Below, piece by piece: positions 1,382 through 9,823 of a DNA stretch of 64,000 nucleotides. The stretch is from assembly GCF_037042905.1 (NCBI RefSeq), contig NC_087245.1:29326001-29390000 (forward strand), written 5' to 3'. Each line of letters opens with the position of its first letter. Position 1 is the first letter of the stretch. The position numbers and the translations under genes are program-made. Below the pieces are notes generated by a model. It was not told the DNA's origin, searched no databases, and saw nothing but the letters and a program-made list of their open reading frames with translations. This stretch comes from Lytechinus pictus. Lineage: Eukaryota.

Positions 1382-1763
1382 TATAACAAAGAAATAGACA
1401 TGTATGCCTACATATTACAGTATTACTCACTATTTGATCATGGAAAGAACCTCTCGCATGAGTTAGTCACCAATAAAATAATTATTCATACAATATAACA
1501 ACTACTAAATAATTATGAAAAGATATATTTTAAACAAGGACTTGAAAGTTGAGTAATGATAACAATATTAACAATAATAAAAAAAACAATACGAATATTA
1601 ATTAAGATTATTTAAAAAAAAAGATTAAAAAAGTATTCCAAGACGATGATGATAATCGTGACGATGAGGATACTGAAAAGGAGGAGAAAACCGAAAATGT
1701 ATTATTCCTTCATGTTTCTGAGAGAAAATATCTTACAAGGAGATAAAAGTTGTAAGAGCTAAC

Positions 1764-3698
1764 CTGCTACGAAGAATGTCCCAAACTCGTCAATCATGTC
1801 TGCTGTGTCGATGTTTTGTCCGTTGCAGAGATCGTCTTCGACTTCAAGGATACATGTCAAGATGTCCTTAGGCAACTCATCTCCTCTCTTCTTTGCCGCT
1901 CTTCTCTGTTCAATGCAATCCTTGCCATATTTTCGTACCAGTTTAATGGCGTCGCGCACTGAGCGGCGATATTTACGAGCCTTACTGCGAGGATCCATCT
2001 GGAAGAAAAAAGATAATTTTTGTAAAAAAAAAAGCTAGACGTAGATATAGATCTTATTTTACAGCAAAGATAACTATATTGTTTCAAGAATGGAAAAGGC
2101 CAAGAGTATATCTCTTCATATCGGTCAAAATGATTGAGCTGAGACACTGTACAAGCCGGGGGGGGGGGGGGGTCACCGTGTCCCGAGAGGACCAAACCAT
2201 GTGTGTGTTAAAATGAAACCCTAGGTTATTAGGATTACACCCAAGAGATTGCAACCGACACAAAAGAGTGTAAAAGTACAAATCAAAAGTGCTGTAATAA
2301 CACCCACAAGAGTTGAACTACTATTTAAAAGAAATAACACTGGGATAAAATGACTGGTGCATCAATCAACGCGACAGATTTTGCTGCGCACTCTTCCCAA
2401 TCTATCACTTCACAAAGAGTCAATTTCGTGTGGAGAAACAGCATGATCTGATGTATAAAAAAAGGTGGATTTTTAAGTTGTAAAGAAACGTTGAAATTCA
2501 GCAACACTAACCATCATCATAGGTTGCTTGAATATAACATCCATTCCTTCAAGAGCAAGCGCCACCGCCGACGGGAACGGGCAGTCAGGTCTCTCAACAG
2601 CGTTTACATCCATGTCAAATCCAACCTTAGTTGCAGAAAATGGAGAAGAAAAGTAAAATTTTTATAATGAATTGCTGATAATTCGACATAATTTACCATT
2701 AAAGACAGTGGTTAACGTGACGGAGGTAGGCCTATTCAGTATTTGTTCATTTGGATATCCTCCGGTTATTTTGGCTGAATTTGAGACCAACCATCTGATT
2801 TGCACTTTAGCGACGAAATGGTTACGAATATAAAACTGAAGAGTTTTGAAAACTGCTTCCCCGTGTGTGTCCAGAAAACTTTGCCCAATGTTTTGGATTT
2901 CTTTAGAAAGGGTCATTAATATAGGTGGCACGTATTTTTCATCTAATTACGCCAGCAGGACTTTAAACTCAACAGACACAGTCAATGTTGCCATCATAGT
3001 TCTCATTAAAGATAGTCATCATGCATAGAAAATGAAGGGAGAGAGGAGGAGTTACCTTTGCAATTACATCCAAGGTGACATCGTTGAAATGGTCTAGCAT
3101 TCTTACGAGCGTTTTGCCATCAGCTAGGGGAGCTAGGTGATCCCGCAAGCGGGTCGCACTGTCGTTGAAGAGATCCATCATTTGCATGAGATACCTGATA
3201 TAAGATTCAAAAAGCGGTCGTCACCTTTTTGTGTGGCACAAGACCCTTTATTTCAATTCAAACATGAAAACTACCCTACCGAGATATATTTTTTAAAAAC
3301 ATTATTGCAGCCACCACCCCCATCGTAAAATTAACCTTGCACGCTGCATATGATCACGAGTTGACGGATATTTAAAGTGCGTACTGCAGTCTTGAAAATA
3401 GCGATACATATTAAATAATCACGAGTTAAATTCAAGAAAAAATCATCGAAACCTGATGGAAATGATAAGGTATTGGATTATGGTTATTAGGTATTGGAAT
3501 TTGGTGATATTTTGAGAAAATTGGTATATGCATGCCCTCATGCTGAAAATGATATCATGTTCCCACTCTCACTTATATTTCTTTTAAATGAAATCACAAT
3601 TATTTAATATTTTAATACACGTGTGTAAAACATGTCTCCCTTCTAATAAAAATCAATTTCAGCAATGACTATCGTAAACAGTGAATGTGTAATATACA

Positions 3699-3733
<35 letters not shown>

Positions 3734-6700
3734 TATATTGTGATGAGGCCAAATTGAAAGATGACGCAGGACAATATATATATATCATTTGTAGATTACA
3801 CATTCACTGTTTACAATAGTTGGCCTCATCACAATATGTTTCATACTCACACCTCAAGAGCGTTTGGTACAANNNNNNNNNNNNNNNNNNNNNNNNNNNN
3901 NNNNNNNNNNNNNNNNNNNNNNNNNNNNNNNNNNNNNNNNNNNNNNNNNNNNNNNNNNNNNNNNNNNNNNNNNNNNNNNNNNNNNNNNNNNNNNNNNNNN
4001 NNNNNNNNNNNNNNNNNNNNNNNNNNNNNNNNNNNNNNNNNNNNNNNNNNNNNNNNNNNNNNNNNNNNNNNAGGTTAAAGAGATGACATCATCAGCTCGC
4101 TAATATAAATGATTCGCCAAAACAATGCAAAACTTTGAAATGTCATAACTAATAACTGTGCTATCCCTGGTAGATTTGTGATGAAATTCGCGGCGTTTTG
4201 CTTGGATGATTTTCGGACTCTTATCTGTTCAAATCATATAGGTTTTAGAAGTTTAGCATGGAGTACCTCTTCGATATTTGGATGTCACACCTGCACATAT
4301 GTCCCATTAGAGACGTGAATTAACTAGCAGTAAAATGAGGATTAAATTATTGGACTAATTCATATTGCCATTAGACAGAAAATACGTTTGAGATTTCACA
4401 TCTGACCATCAAACTGTATATTGACTGGCTCAATACGAAAATGAATCAATAATTGAAACATCTCAGGACGAATTCTCATTCATCCCCTGAAACATGAAAA
4501 CTACCCTATTTTTCCGCCCGTCCTAGAATCAGTATTAGATGGCGAATCATATGCATACAATGTCGTCAATTAGCTATATAAAATTAGAAATCTTGGGTCG
4601 AATGATTTTTTAAAGTGTTTATTTATTATTGTTTTTCATTTTCATTTATTTCTTTATTCATTTCATTTCGGGGGACTGTCTTTTTTATATTACGCCGTGG
4701 ATTTTGAGATTTACTCACTTTCGATTAAAGGCTGGGTTTAGGAGAGCTCGCCGTGTGTGCCATTTCTCGTGATCAGTTTGTGAGATCAGTCCGTTGCCCA
4801 TGAATCTCTCGCCAAACACGGAATAGAATCCTACGTACATGCTTTGTGGTTTAAGATGGCGGCTATCGAGGCAAACTTCCTGTTTTAAAGAAGATCGATG
4901 ATATCAGAGTTAAAGCTTGTGGATAAATCTCATCAAAAACCCCTCAAAATATTTTGACTTAAACACAAACACAAACAGAATATATAAGTTGAATATGATG
5001 ATGGTGATACATGTATGACTAATGACTAAGTGATTCACTAAAATTGTGAGCAATGACGAGATAAATGACAAAGTGGAAATAAGTGTTAAATCTTTCTATC
5101 TTGGGCATACCATTACAGGACTTAAACCTTTTCTCAGCTATCCCATGGTCGCCATAATGAATGATAAAATTGTATCAGTCAATAATTTACCTTCACCGCT
5201 TTAGAGTCGCAACATACCACCATCGGTTGTAAAACAAATCGCAGATAGAAGACTGGTCCGAGTTCCCTCGTCCTTGGTTAAAACAGAAACAATATAAGTA
5301 AAGAATTATTCTTTACTTTGTCCCCAAAACAAAAAAGAACATGTTAAGATATGCCTTAAAAAAGAGCGAGGTAATGTCACTTTTTTATAATTTTTTTTAT
5401 TTTGTGTTTTGTTTTCTGTTTTCTTTCTCTTTTAATTCATATTAGTGTAGTGCTTGGATGGGTATGGAACTTAAATCTAATTCATACTGGAACGCCTTCT
5501 GAATTAAGTTTTTAAGAGAGATGCAAATTTTCACTAAGAGATGCAAAATTTTAAGTGTTGATTGAAACATGTTTTAAATAAAACATGTTAAGTTTTTTCC
5601 AAATTCATTTTAACGAATCTTTAAGTCGGAATAGTGCCTCTATGCTGTTTTATGAAGTTATCTTTAAGCTTACCATTGGTACATCAGCAACAGGGGCGGG
5701 AAATCCAGCTTCTTCGCAACAGCATTGAAATGAGACAAGTGACCAGTGAAGAAGCTAGTGACGGAAAAAATAATATTCGAATCAGTCATATCTTCCTTGA
5801 GAGAAACCAGTTTAATCGTAGAAATTACAAATGGTGGCGCAAGGATATTCGATAGGGGTCAAGATCTTATTTTTTTAATCTCTTTCTCTCTCTCAATTAT
5901 ATTAGAAGGATACTACAAAGATACATGGTAGAACTTTTCATTCGTCACGAATTTGTATTTGTAGTGTACTGTACTATCATGGACCTACAAAGCCTTGTGT
6001 GAGAGCAAAGCCTTCTCGAGCTTGTAAATCGCATTATAGTCCTAGGCATAGTTTTACATCTCGTTTTGCCTGAGCGTCCTTCCAACATTCCCAGCTGAGG
6101 TCAGACTCGGCCTCGCTCCTCAAGAGCGACTGTCCTAGCTTCGCTTACGTAACGACAACAAGGACAGTCTCTCAGTCGCGTGCGGCCTCGCCCAGTGATG
6201 ACAGATCTCAGTCGCATGCGACCTCGCCTGACCTCACGCTGAGGACAGATCTGTTTTACATAAGTCCAGGGTCTCGCTCCGCTCGTCAAAAGAGTCTGCC
6301 CTTGTGTTTATATGCAACATCAAGGACCGACTCTCAGTGCCGTGCAGCCCATCTAGGCCGAGGACGAATGTTGTTCTTGGGAGAAGGATAGAAACTAGCT
6401 CAAGGATGCTTTGCTCGGTTTAGCTCTCTATAAAGGTAAAAGGGGTGGAAATTCGCATTTGAGAAGAGTTTTTCGGGGCATGTCTTGGAGTCCATTTCAG
6501 TCAAGTATAGTTGGATTGTGTCTATTCTATGGACAATCTAACCTAAAAGTCAGCTCTGCTTATTTCAATTTGCTGTTCCCAACTTGTGAGAGAATATACA
6601 CACATGTACAGATAGTTTATTTACATTCTGGGAGAGGGAAATTAAGAACTGAAGTGAGAACTTTTATACAGAGTCAATGAGAGGAGAAAAACGAACTGTT

Positions 6701-8008
6701 GGTGAAATCAGTGAGATCTGTGAGAGATTACATTAGAGCGGTTCATTGATTTCCAAACCCCGTAAAGATTTTGCAACAATATGTTATAAGCTACTTGAAC
6801 ATGTTAAAGTGTTCTGCAACTCAAGCCTGAGGGTTAATAAATTTCTCATTTATTTTATTTCATTTATTTGTAGTTTTATTATACAGGGTAGCATTGTCAG
6901 TTTCAGAACTGCTTTCCACACCGGCCCTGTCAACATACAATTTATTACAATTAATATAATTGAATCAGTGACATTTAAATAATCAATAGCACAATTAAAT
7001 ATTCACACATATGCATATCTATATAAACATGGTACCCAAAAGAATCGAAAAAAGGTAATAAACACAAGAAATATCCATTAAAATCTAAAGAAAGAATCAA
7101 TTGGTTTCAAAATATACGAAATCCCAAAACAAAACAAAAACAAAAACGATTTTGAAAATAAGAAAAAAGTAAAAAAAATCATATGAAGTTTGTCCTAATA
7201 CAAAAATGAAAATAAAATCAATATCAAACTATCACACATTTTCGTTAAACCAGGCATTGAAATTACTATTTTCCTTCATATATTTTTATTGTTTCATACG
7301 GTATACGGAAAATCATAATTTCCTTTAATTTTATCAAGTCCTGATTTAAAAGCATTTAACGACCGACTGGTTCTTTGATTTATATCGAGGTTGTTCCACC
7401 AGCATATCCCATGAATTCCAATGTCCTACTGGCCGCACAATTATTCAACTTGATGGTAACACTGAGAGAACTATTCATGCGGAATCAGTCAATTTCATGA
7501 CTTGGCCTGGCGACGATACATTTCATAGTAGGGTGCAAGGTCACTCGGGCATTTATATACTTAAATCATTCTATGTTGATTCCATCGAATGGGAACTTTT
7601 GCTACTTAAGTTCTCTAAACATATCAACTATGTGAGTTCTTGGATGTGCACCCAGAATCATTCTAGCCATTCTATTTTGTAACTTTGGCAACGCTAATGG
7701 AACGGTCATAAAGGGGGTCATATAACACTTTCCTACATCCTACTATTTAACACAACCGTTAACGTGATACCATGGAGCTATAAAACACAGACCATGGAGC
7801 TATATTAACACATGCTGATACGACGCACTCACACGTATTACCATAGAACAATTCAATCATACCTTGTCGGTCTTGGGCAAGGCAAATGTCCATATTTCCT
7901 GTTAAATCGATACAAAAACCACGTAAACACCACGAAGGCAATGCCAACTGTACATGTTACCACCAAGAATACATAGAAAAGTATGCTGACCGCGACATTT
8001 AACTCCAT
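1764..8008 (-). CDS. CYP46A1: Cytochrome P450, cholesterol 24-hydroxylase-like (CYP46 family); 5' part only, 7 exons, remaining exons lie beyond the left edge
   Basis: Exons (minus strand): 7863-8008, 5674-5754, 5191-5272, 4719-4879, 3056-3194, 2512-2625, 1764-1998, all GT-AG and phase-compatible. Spliced protein: MELNVAVSILFYVFLVVTCTVGIAFVVFTWFLYRFNRKYGHLPCPRPT-SFFTGHLSHF...YQW-TRELGPVFYLRF...-EVCLDSRHLKPQSMYVGFYSVFGERFMGNGLISQTDHEKWHTRRALLNPAFNRK-YLMQMMDLFND...LADGKTLVRMLDHFNDVTLDVIAK-VGFDMD...-...LPKDILTCIL...DEFGTFFVAG. It shows an N-terminal anchor, a proline hinge, the C-helix WxxxR and the start of the I-helix. FGERFxGxGL and ADGxTxVxM are CYP46 hallmarks. Confidence 0.92.
6848..7420 (-). 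mobile_element. CR1/L2 LINE 3' fragment in CYP46 intron 1
   Basis: Minus-strand GICWWNNLDINQRTSRSLNAFKSGLDK (matches the WN.L...SL..FK..L motif), then a T-rich UTR ending CCCTGTATAATAAAA...AATAAA. Confidence 0.55.
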
Positions 8009-8034
8009 TTTGGATAATCTTGGCCGTTGTGCGT

Positions 8035-9116
8035 CCCGGGGGGGGCACTCGACCAAAAAAGTGGTAGGGGTGTGCCGCGGGCGAGGCGAAAAACGGGGGC
8101 CTTGGAGCGGGCTTATTGTAAAAAGGAGGGTCCTCGGAACGGGCTTCGGAACTACAAATGTTTGTGAAAACGGGGGTCCTCGGAACGGATCTCCGTATCT
8201 CTGTGAGTGCGTATGCATCCCTATGGCCCGGGGGGGGGGCACTCAGTATATAATGCATAGTGGGTATGTGCCGCGGAGGGGACCCCCATTTTTACACTCA
8301 AATTTCCGTTCCAAGGCATAGCATTTTTGTCTTATTGAGAAATAGAACAAAGAAAGCCGCTCCAAGGCATATCATTTCCTTCTTATCGAGAAAAAAGAAG
8401 AAAGAAATCCGCTCCAAAGCTTCGCATATTTTTCGTTACGCCGTTCCGGTCGCATTGATCTGCTACAATTTTGGTGAAAAGCGGCCGTACAGCGCTTTTC
8501 GACCATCGCCTAAGCGCGAGCGCACCCGGCGGAGGCCGCGCTAGCTGCGTCATGCACGATTGCCCGTTCCATAGGGATGCATACGCACTCACAGAGATAC
8601 GGAGATCCGTTCCGAGGACCCCTGTTTTCACAAACATTTGTAGTTCCGAAGCCCGTTCCGAGGACCCTCCTTTTTACAATAAGCCCGCTCCAAGGCCCCC
8701 GTTTTTTGCCTCGCCCGCGGCACACCCCTACCACTTTTTTGGTCGAGTGCCCCCCCCCGGGCCCTATGGAACGGGCAATCGTGCATGACGCAGCTAGCAC
8801 GGCCTCCGCCGGGTGCGCTCGCACTTAGGCGATGGTCGAAAAGCGCTCTACGGCCGCTTTTCACCAAAATTGTAGCAGATCAATGCGACCGGAACGGCGT
8901 AACGAAAAATATGCGAGGCTTTGGAGCGGATTTCTTTCTTCTTTTTTTCTCGATAAGAAGGAAATGCTATGCCTTGGAGCGGCTTTCTTTGTTCTTTTTC
9001 TCAATAAGACAAAAATGCTATGCCTTGGAACGGAAATTTGAGTGTAAAAATGGGGGTCCCCTCCGCGGCACATACCCACTATGCATTATATACTGAGTGC
9101 CCCCCCCCCCCCCGGG
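8035..9116. mobile_element. Non-autonomous DNA transposon (MITE, CCCGGG-G-run-CACTC termini, 8-bp TSD); outer copy interrupted by a second copy
   Basis: TIRs CCCGGGGGGGGCACTC (8035) and GAGTGC(C)nGGG (9116). Perfect TSD TTGTGCGT at 8027-8034 and 9117-9124. Removing the inner copy leaves a ~539-bp element. Confidence 0.93.
8227..8761. mobile_element. Inner, inverted, intact 535-bp copy of the same MITE
   Basis: Starts CCCGG(G)nCACTCAGTATATAATG and ends GGTCGAGTGC(C)nGGG. Perfect TSD CCCTATGG at 8219-8226 and 8762-8769. Its sequence is the reverse complement of the rejoined outer halves. Confidence 0.93.
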
Positions 9117-9823
9117 TTGTGCGTACACGTATTGCCGGTATACGAACTCGAATCGCTTGTCTGTCCTCAAAGGTTGAGTGAGTTTCTTATGGTTAGATAA
9201 TACGGTTGTCGATCTGCCCGATCAGTACATATCCGAGCTTTGCAATGCTCACGATGGACTTTCCCCCAGTGCATGGGTCAAAGCATGTCTGGATCGATTT
9301 GTTTACTCATGGTTTCACGGGTACAAAACGTTTCCCATAAAGTGGCACTTCATTATAGGAATATTAAGATTTTTATCAGTAACGTCATATTCGAGCAGCT
9401 GCCTCGTATGTTACATCATGTATGTAATATAAAATGCATGAATTTCAATGTTTAATGGCTCCTGATGACTATTTTTTTTTCTTTTCCAGAATGTACAATT
9501 GCGGCAATTTAAAAAAAAAATGACATATTGATATTTTTTAATTCACAATACGTGGAAAGCTGCTACATTTGACGTCACAAATAAGAATAAACTTATGATA
9601 ACTAAGCTCTTTAATCTTTGATTGATTTTCCCTAAACCTTCTTCAGTGTTTTCTAATTATTTCCTCCTTTTTTTTTACTATAAACTTTTTCTCAAGGAGA
9701 ACTTCCCCTTTCACAGTTAAACATACAAACAGCATCATGTCATTTGCATTTTGCCCCCATTCACATTGTTAAGTTGAAGCTCACTGCACTTAAGAACTTT
9801 GTGCATATGGCGCACACACAATC

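What the first reader, a model, noticed from the sequence alone, without database searches (positions are those of the whole stretch)
8027..9124. A MITE inserted head-to-head into a copy of itself, with both 8-bp target-site duplications intact
Seen directly: the outer element 8035-9116 is flanked by TTGTGCGT x2, and the inner element 8227-8761 by CCCTATGG x2. The inner copy contains the uninterrupted junction (reverse complement GCATCCCTATGGAACGGGCA) that is split in the outer copy, so the order of events is readable. The two copies differ at only scattered positions, and the region is GC/CpG-rich in an AT-rich background. Inference: both insertions are recent, the family may still be mobilised, and it may hop locally or prefer its own sequence. 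The termini (CCCGGG plus a variable G-run plus CACTC, 8-bp TSD) do not match the CA/TA ends of typical hAT or P elements, so I cannot assign a superfamily.
Basis: partly seen in the sequence, partly recalled or inferred. Interest (0 to 1): 0.75.

Follow-up and report, generated by a model that had tools for sequence, protein, structure and literature searches.

The report
Sea-urchin MITE nested inside itself
A 535-base non-coding jumping element of a sea urchin has landed, upside down, inside an older copy of its own family; this is real but ordinary, because the family has over a thousand young copies and about one such hit is expected by chance.

Summary
An outer element (8035-9116, TSD TTGTGCGT) is split by an inverted inner element (8227-8761, TSD CCCTATGG). 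Removing the inner copy and one TSD restores a 539-bp element that differs from the inner one at 9 substitutions plus homopolymer lengths. The family is a young, abundant MITE of an 812-Mb sea-urchin genome (earlier notes say Lytechinus pictus). It has at least 1,100 copies, most 98-99% alike, with 8-bp TSDs and bipartite ends.

Self-targeting and local hopping are not supported:
- The two copies share no derived substitution and are as far apart as random pairs.
- The inner copy groups with copies on other chromosomes.
- The junction is unique in the genome.
- No other self-nest occurs among about 98 further ends listed.
- Random insertion predicts 0.4-1.3 self-nests.

I could not assign a superfamily. 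The ends and targets do not fit hAT. No P-like scars were found. No hAT, MULE, P, Merlin or KDZ transposase hit lay beside a listed end, but those lists were partial. Short-read contigs gave no independent check of the assembly.

The closest precedents are maize double Ds and rice MITE multimers. This is a new member of a known kind, of low interest.

The parts
8027..8034 (.). Left target-site duplication of the outer element (TTGTGCGT)
   Evidence: Identical octamer at 9117-9124
8035..8218 (-). Outer element, first part. It carries the 'right-type' end: terminal module 8035-8050 (CCC, 8 G, CACTC) and subterminal box 8064-8080.
   Evidence: Aligns to the reverse complement of inner 8570-8761. 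Listed as a right-type end.
8219..8226 (.). Left TSD of the inner element (CCCTATGG). It is itself part of the outer element's sequence.
   Evidence: Present once in the uninterrupted inner copy (8565-8572 on the other strand) and twice around the insertion
8227..8761 (+). Inner 535-bp element, inverted relative to the outer one. Left-type end: 8227-8244 (CCC, 10 G, CACTC) with box 8260-8276. Right-type end: box 8715-8731 and terminus 8745-8761. It holds eight same-strand copies of the core CGYTCC, seven of them within an 11-nt motif.
   Evidence: 100% self hit and 98-99% identity to 40 full-length copies elsewhere. Motif count 7-8 on one strand and 0 on the other, with 0.4 expected.
8762..8769 (.). 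Right TSD of the inner element (CCCTATGG)
8770..9116 (-). Outer element, second part. It carries the 'left-type' end: box 9063-9079 and terminus 9095-9116 (GAGTG, 14 C, GGG).
   Evidence: Aligns to the reverse complement of inner 8227-8564
9117..9124 (.). Right TSD of the outer element (TTGTGCGT)
7856..8008 (-). Neighbouring feature: an open frame starting at an ATG 26 nt from the outer element's end. It looks like a membrane-anchor first exon, possibly of a P450 gene.
Evidence: ORF. Only a weak Pfam p450 hit (E 0.007, below cut-off) on a downstream exon, 1762-2034 minus strand.

Best explanation
This is a nest made by two ordinary, independent cut-and-paste insertions of one non-autonomous DNA transposon (MITE) family.

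Sequence of events:
1. A 539-bp copy inserted 26 nt upstream of a gene's start codon and duplicated TTGTGCGT.
2. A second copy from a different source lineage inserted 192 nt inside the first, in the opposite orientation, and duplicated CCCTATGG.

How the family moves. A transposase supplied in trans makes 8-bp staggered target cuts. It probably recognises a bipartite end. The terminal module is CCCGGG, a variable G run, then CACTC. A conserved 17-nt box lies 13-15 nt further in. The same-strand internal motifs may also take part.

Why it nested. Self-nesting here is most likely chance. The family covers about 0.1% of the genome and has made over a thousand recent insertions.

Shown: the anatomy, the order of events, the family's size and youth, the 8-bp TSD rule, and that the inner copy is not a copy of the outer.

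Inferred: cut-and-paste by an unidentified transposase, the roles of the end modules, and chance as the cause.
For: - Structure and TSDs.
- Family size: 2,045 first-look candidates with 40 of 40 scored at 98-99% identity. There are 2,062 exact two-module ends against 0 in the control, and 1,122 right-type ends.
- TSD rule: 23 of 29 perfect and 3 more with one mismatch.
- Both end types carry the same terminal module and box, and no third end type with both modules exists (5 hits, all point-mutated MITE ends).
- Inner and outer share no derived substitutions. The inner copy shares variants with L002 and L003 on other chromosomes. The outer copy has 3-4 private changes against 1 for the inner, which fits the outer being older.
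- The 86-nt outer/inner junction is unique in the genome.
- Only this locus has clustered ends among the ends listed.
- Expected chance self-nests, N^2 x L / 2G, come to 0.4-1.3 for N = 1,100-2,000.
- Another copy (L050) carries an unrelated element nested inside it, so these MITEs are hit like any other DNA.
- The preferred target is slightly GC-rich: TSD GC is 47% against 37% for the genome (p = 0.002). This mildly favours a 53%-GC element as a target.
Against: - No autonomous partner was found, so the transposase and superfamily are unknown.
- The genome-wide number of self-nests could not be counted. A preference of up to roughly 50-fold is therefore not excluded. The upper limit is about 3% of copies.
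- No read or contig independent of the assembly bridges the nest.
Confidence: 0.8

Rival explanations
1. The family prefers its own sequence or hops locally, so the nest reflects targeting rather than chance.
For: - TSDs are GC-richer than the genome and show a weak symmetric W|S...S|W pattern. The inner target fits it on both sides: T before, A after, and C/G at the TSD edges.
- Some rice MITE families self-insert often (PMC5172404, citing Jiang and Wessler 2001).
- One nest was seen among about 99 listed ends.
Against: - The inner copy is not derived from the outer: there are no shared derived sites and it has different nearest relatives.
- No other self-nest occurs among about 98 other right ends or about 60 elements in chromosome 1, 0-39 Mb.
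- Of about 35 copies held as sequence and checked for ends or interruptions, one carries a nested insertion, and that is an unrelated element (L050).
- Chance alone predicts about one nest.
- The locus was picked because it is unusual, which is ascertainment bias.
Confidence: 0.1
2. The nest is an assembly artefact: a fold-back or chimeric join of reads from different copies.
For: - The family has more than 1,000 near-identical copies and long homopolymer ends, both hard on assemblers.
- No independent contig bridges the junctions.
Against: - An artefact would not create a perfect 8-bp duplication of an internal octamer exactly at both termini of a complete 535-bp copy.
- It would not leave an outer copy that closes up precisely.
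- The two copies differ at 9 sites, in a pattern matching different sub-lineages.
Confidence: 0.04
3. The composite arose or is maintained by aberrant (alternative) transposition or recombination between copies, as in Ac/Ds systems, rather than by simple insertion.
For: Inverted pairs of ends are known substrates for alternative transposition and for recombination (PMC3239180).
Against: - Both TSD pairs are intact and the outer copy closes up without loss or gain. That is the signature of a simple insertion, not a rearrangement.
- Flanks on both sides are unique and continuous.
Confidence: 0.03

Closest known systems
Maize double Ds (one Ds inserted in inverted orientation into an identical Ds; hAT superfamily)
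   Same: - A non-autonomous element sits upside down in a copy of itself, with an 8-bp TSD.
- This gives four termini in close, unusual relative orientations.
- Such pairs are substrates for alternative transposition and chromosome breakage (general knowledge; English et al. 1995 and Weil and Wessler 1993, as cited in PMC3239180).
   Different: - An animal host and an unrelated sequence.
- The ends do not match hAT.
- No transposase is known, and no evidence of breakage or rearrangement was found here.
- The composite is single-copy.
MITE multimers and self-insertions in rice, maize and mosquito (Jiang and Wessler 2001, via PMC5172404)
   Same: Independent insertions of MITEs into MITEs, recognised by nested TSDs. 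The nesting is used to read the order of events and the target preference.
   Different: - Those families are Tourist/Stowaway types with 2-3 bp TSDs.
- Some show real self-insertion excess, with more than 10% of copies in multimers.
- Here the rate is at most about 3% and is compatible with chance.
Superfamilies with 8-bp TSDs: hAT, P, Merlin, Zisupton/KDZ and some Mutator
   Same: - An 8-bp TSD and short TIRs with subterminal binding-site-like repeats.
- A GC-leaning, roughly symmetric target, which recalls P and Mutator.
   Different: - Termini begin CCCGGG plus a G run, not YARNG (hAT) or CA/CATG (P).
- No hAT target consensus.
- No long terminal scars of the P type.
- TIRs are much shorter than typical Mutator TIRs.
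- No transposase gene is linked to these ends.

Membership tests
MITE (non-autonomous class II element) | Short (<800 bp), no coding capacity, terminal inverted repeats, fixed-length TSD, high copy number, high similarity among copies | tested here: met
   - Length 532-547 bp.
- Only spurious ORFs and no Rfam match.
- TIR modules are present at both ends.
- 8-bp TSD in 23 of 29 copies perfect, plus 3 with one mismatch.
- At least 1,100 copies at 98-99% identity.
hAT | 8-bp TSD | tested here: met
hAT | Termini of the YARNG type and target consensus nTnnnnAn | tested here: not met
   - Termini are CCCGGG, a G run, then CACTC.
- T at TSD position 2 in 6 of 28 sites and A at position 7 in 10 of 28. 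The sample is small.
hAT | Autonomous relative with the same ends encoding a hAT transposase | tested here: inconclusive
   None of the 62 PF05699 hits lies within 10 kb of any listed family end. The end lists are partial, and no DNA could be fetched.
P element superfamily | 7-9 bp TSD, GC-leaning symmetric target | tested here: met
   8-bp TSD. TSD GC is 47% against 37% (p = 0.002), with a weak palindromic profile.
P element superfamily | Excision scars keeping many bases of both termini (staggered cuts inside the TIR) | tested here: not met
   A pattern requiring at least 9 nt of each terminus within 30 nt found one locus in 812 Mb. Absence of scars is weak evidence.
P element superfamily | Autonomous relative with a THAP9-like transposase | tested here: inconclusive
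   41 PF21787 hits, none beside a listed end. The same limits apply as for hAT.
Mutator / MULE | Long (about 100-200 bp or more), highly similar TIRs; TSD usually 9-11 bp | tested here: not met
   The two ends share only the 16-18 nt terminal module (longer where the G run is longer) and a 17-nt box. The TSD is 8 bp. None of the 17 PF10551 hits is near an end.
Merlin / IS1595-like | 8-9 bp TSD; transposase with DDE_Tnp_IS1595 | tested here: inconclusive
   The TSD fits. None of the 53 PF12762 hits lies beside a listed end.
Zisupton / KDZ | 8-bp TSD (PMC12730594); KDZ transposase inside the element | tested here: inconclusive
   - The genome has a single KDZ locus, at chromosome 1, 37,908,374-37,912,503.
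- It lies 3.2 kb from a rare variant end, but that end points away from it.
- No partner end was found.
- About 0.6 such coincidences were expected by chance.

The most novel reading that the evidence does not exclude
The head-to-head nest is more than debris. Its roughly 350-bp near-perfect hairpin (8227-9116) sits 26 nt from a gene start. If transcribed, it would give double-stranded RNA and small RNAs against the whole family of 1,100 or more copies, an animal counterpart of maize Mu killer. With an active transposase, its four ends would make it a double-Ds-like breakage and rearrangement hotspot.
Probability: 0.05. Interest if true: 0.6.

Novelty: new member of a known kind. Interest (0 to 1): 0.22.

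Why it matters
**The nest itself** is a textbook consequence of a recent MITE burst and changes no concept.

**The family** has modest value:
- It is a very young family of over a thousand copies in a laboratory sea urchin.
- Its ends are unusual: CCCGGG, a variable G run, then CACTC.
- Its TSD is 8 bp.
- A second species label also carries it at high abundance.

If its transposase were found, it might be an active endogenous DNA transposon in a model echinoderm. Its insertions near gene starts could be useful polymorphic markers or regulatory variants.

**This locus** places two GC- and CpG-rich copies and a long inverted repeat directly upstream of a candidate P450 gene.

Tried and rejected
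**Search for an autonomous partner**
- I fetched 20 regions around unpaired or oddly spaced ends. They were older full-length MITEs (85-90% identity), truncated ends inside a 4.53-kb tandem duplication (L040) or beside a 22-bp satellite (L049), and a MITE carrying an unrelated insert (L050). None was autonomous.
- Regions were cut at 10 kb, so minus-strand ends were lost. Later searches gave coordinates only.
- Negation patterns listed ends whose interior differs from the MITE. They gave no +/- pair 1-15 kb apart and no neighbour among the hAT, MULE, P, Merlin or KDZ Pfam hits.

**Leads judged not significant or unrelated**
- KDZ adjacency: not significant.
- A 2.67-kb span on chromosome 1 (4,366,727-4,369,398) pairs an 'AC-type' related end with a right-type end. 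It contains a different 1,000-copy repeat, so it is not autonomous as far as can be seen.
- The 'TT-type' hits are not termini.

- P-like scar search: negative.
- Read laying found no contig bridging the nest, no locus-specific RNA and no usable allele information.
- Literature searches found no description of this family.
- Dfam and Repbase are not available here.

Full report
**1. Observation**

The sequence is as described.
- The outer element spans 8035-9116 between two copies of TTGTGCGT.
- The inner element spans 8227-8761 between two copies of CCCTATGG.
- The repeat finder reports three inverted arm pairs of 198, 186 and 167 nt at 97-99% complementarity, together with both octamer duplications.
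- Cutting out the inner copy and one octamer leaves 539 bp. This aligns over its whole length with the reverse complement of the 535-bp inner copy, with 9 mismatches and 6 gap columns, all gaps in G or T runs.
- The octamer is single in the intact inner copy and double around the insertion, so the outer element was there first.
- The element is 53.4% GC in a 37.2% GC window. CpG observed/expected is 1.09 against 0.85.
- The terminal motif occurs only at these four ends in the 64-kb window, with 0 expected.

**2. The family**

The window lies on chromosome-scale contig 1 of an 812-Mb, 368-contig genome. Earlier notes of this scan name it the sea urchin Lytechinus pictus; I did not test that.

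Size and age:
- A search with the inner copy gave 2,045 first-look candidates. All 40 that were scored are full-length at 98-99% identity.
- An exact two-module end pattern has 2,062 hits against 0 for the reversed control.
- The right-type end alone has 1,122 hits. There are therefore at least about 1,100 copies, spread evenly (1.2-1.4 per Mb).
- Older copies at 85-90% identity also exist.

TSDs and targets:
- In 29 other copies parsed automatically, the 8-bp TSD is perfect in 23 and has one mismatch in 3.
- Terminal G runs vary from 6 to about 20.
- Targets are mildly GC-rich. TSD GC is 47% against 37% (p = 0.002).
- The target profile is weakly symmetric: A or T just outside the TSD and G or C at its edges.
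- Targets do not show the hAT consensus (n = 28).

Ends and internal motifs:
- Each end has a terminal module of CCCGGG, a G run, then CACTC.
- A conserved 17-nt box lies 13 or 15 nt further in. Between and beyond these modules the two ends differ.
- Eight copies of the core CGYTCC, seven within an 11-nt motif, lie on one strand across both arms. None lies on the other strand, and 0.4 are expected.
- There is no Rfam match and no real ORF.

Public runs:
- Runs of two species labels hold the repeat.
- The label matching the flank perfectly is presumably the window's species.
- In DNA runs of the other label, the summed word depth over the MITE is 10^3.5-10^4 times that of the flank. This shows high abundance but is not a calibrated copy number.

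**3. Chance or preference?**

- In an alignment of 34 copies, inner and outer share no derived substitution.
- They differ at 12 alignment columns, against a mean of 10.1 for random young pairs.
- The inner copy's nearest relatives are copies on other chromosomes (L003, L002). The outer copy's are L012 and L004.
- The outer copy has 3-4 private changes and the inner has 1, which agrees with the order of insertion. The inner copy did not come from the outer one.
- The 86-nt junction is unique in the genome, so the composite has not moved as a unit.
- Among the first 100 right-type ends listed (all of contig 1 and 26 Mb of contig 2), only this locus has two within 1.2 kb.
- Among the first 100 two-module ends (contig 1, 0-39 Mb), only this locus shows the +,+,-,- order.
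- With N = 1,100-2,000 copies of 535 bp in 812 Mb, random insertion predicts N^2 x L / 2G = 0.4-1.3 self-nests.
- One nest, found by a reader looking for oddities, is therefore what chance gives.
- A preference cannot be excluded. The upper limit is about 3% of copies.

**4. Superfamily**

An 8-bp TSD fits hAT, P, Merlin, Zisupton/KDZ (PMC12730594) and some Mutator elements.

Evidence against particular superfamilies:
- hAT: the termini and target consensus do not fit.
- Mutator: the TIRs are short.
- P: weakly, only one locus keeps long pieces of both termini.

Pfam hit counts in this genome:

| Pfam family | Superfamily | Hits |
|---|---|---|
| PF05699 | hAT | 62 |
| PF10551 | MULE | 17 |
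| PF21787 | P | 41 |
| PF12762 | Merlin | 53 |
| PF18758 | KDZ | 1 locus |

- None of these hits lies within 10 kb of, and inside, any listed family end.
- The KDZ locus is 3.2 kb from a rare variant end. That end faces away, has no partner, and about 0.6 such coincidences were expected.
- A related 'AC-type' end with the same terminal module and a similar box exists (L035:9040). About 42 ends of other types carry both modules, so the MITE belongs to a small group of families.
- The partner transposase remains unidentified. The end lists were partial and no further DNA could be read.

**5. Mechanism and comparison**

The most likely history is two standard cut-and-paste integrations by a trans-acting transposase that makes 8-bp staggered target cuts. 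The second integration hit the first by chance.

MITE-in-MITE nests and self-insertions are long known in rice, maize and mosquito. The inverted self-nest with an 8-bp TSD has the geometry of maize double Ds, whose mixed ends drive alternative transposition (and general knowledge).

The nest creates a hairpin of about 350 bp. Its predicted energy is -741.5 kcal/mol, against -277 for shuffles. RNA reads over the MITE are few, lie on both strands, and mostly run on into unrelated flanks. The unique flank is silent in the run sampled. There is no sign that this locus is transcribed.

**6. Limits**

- No independent confirmation of the assembly was possible.
- The internal evidence makes an artefact unlikely: two different perfect TSDs, exact closure of the outer copy, and 9 lineage-consistent differences.

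**7. Verdict**

- This is a new, apparently undescribed member of a known kind. Dfam and Repbase could not be consulted.
- Interest is low: 0.22.

Noticed in passing
window 7856-8008 (-), with exons near 4718-4903, 2972-3220 and 1762-2034 (-): The outer MITE ends 26 nt upstream of an ATG that opens a membrane-anchor-like first exon. Downstream frames look P450-like, but only one gives a weak Pfam p450 hit (E 0.007, below cut-off). The gene runs off the window start.
   Followed up: partly
L035:9040-9555 (contig 1, 4,366,727 onward): A related 'AC-type' element end has the same CCCGGG, 21-G run and CACTC terminus and a similar subterminal box, but an unrelated AT-rich interior. From L035:9555 a different repeat of about 1,000 copies begins. 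A right-type MITE end faces it 2.67 kb away.
   Followed up: partly
L050:679-1203 (contig 1, about 4,914,680): A MITE copy with its own TSD carries a ~520-bp unrelated AT-rich insertion flanked by an 11-nt duplication. Other mobile elements therefore also nest in this family.
   Followed up: no
Contig 1, 37,908,374-37,912,503 (+): This is the only KDZ/Zisupton-type transposase match in the 812-Mb genome: two fragments 4 kb apart, one with a stop. It lies 3.2 kb from a rare variant end of this family that has six copies genome-wide.
   Followed up: partly
Contig 1, 30,306,106-30,307,363: A right-type end and the rare variant left end face each other 1.27 kb apart. This is either a longer relative of the MITE or a copy with an insert. 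The sequence could not be read.
   Followed up: no
Contig 10, 14,009,621-14,009,665: A 45-nt mini-element carries both family termini (CCCGGG plus G run, and C run plus GGG) around 22 unrelated bases. It is the only such locus in the genome and may be an extreme deletion derivative or an excision scar.
   Followed up: no
Contig 10, about 30.09-30.30 Mb: MULE, P-type and Merlin-type transposase fragments cluster within about 200 kb. The region looks like a transposon graveyard or cluster.
   Followed up: no
L040:294-9360 (contig 1, about 9,001,080-9,010,150): A 4.53-kb tandem segmental duplication, almost 100% identical, includes a truncated 152-bp MITE end.
   Followed up: partly
L049:415-1800 (contig 1, about 26,441,500): A satellite with a 22-bp period starts directly after a 74-bp truncated MITE end.
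   Followed up: no
Read-laying run X21, loose ends before window 8034: Sixteen RNA reads enter a MITE copy from one shared flank that looks tRNA-like. At least one other copy of the family is transcribed from, or next to, a tRNA-like or SINE sequence.
   Followed up: no
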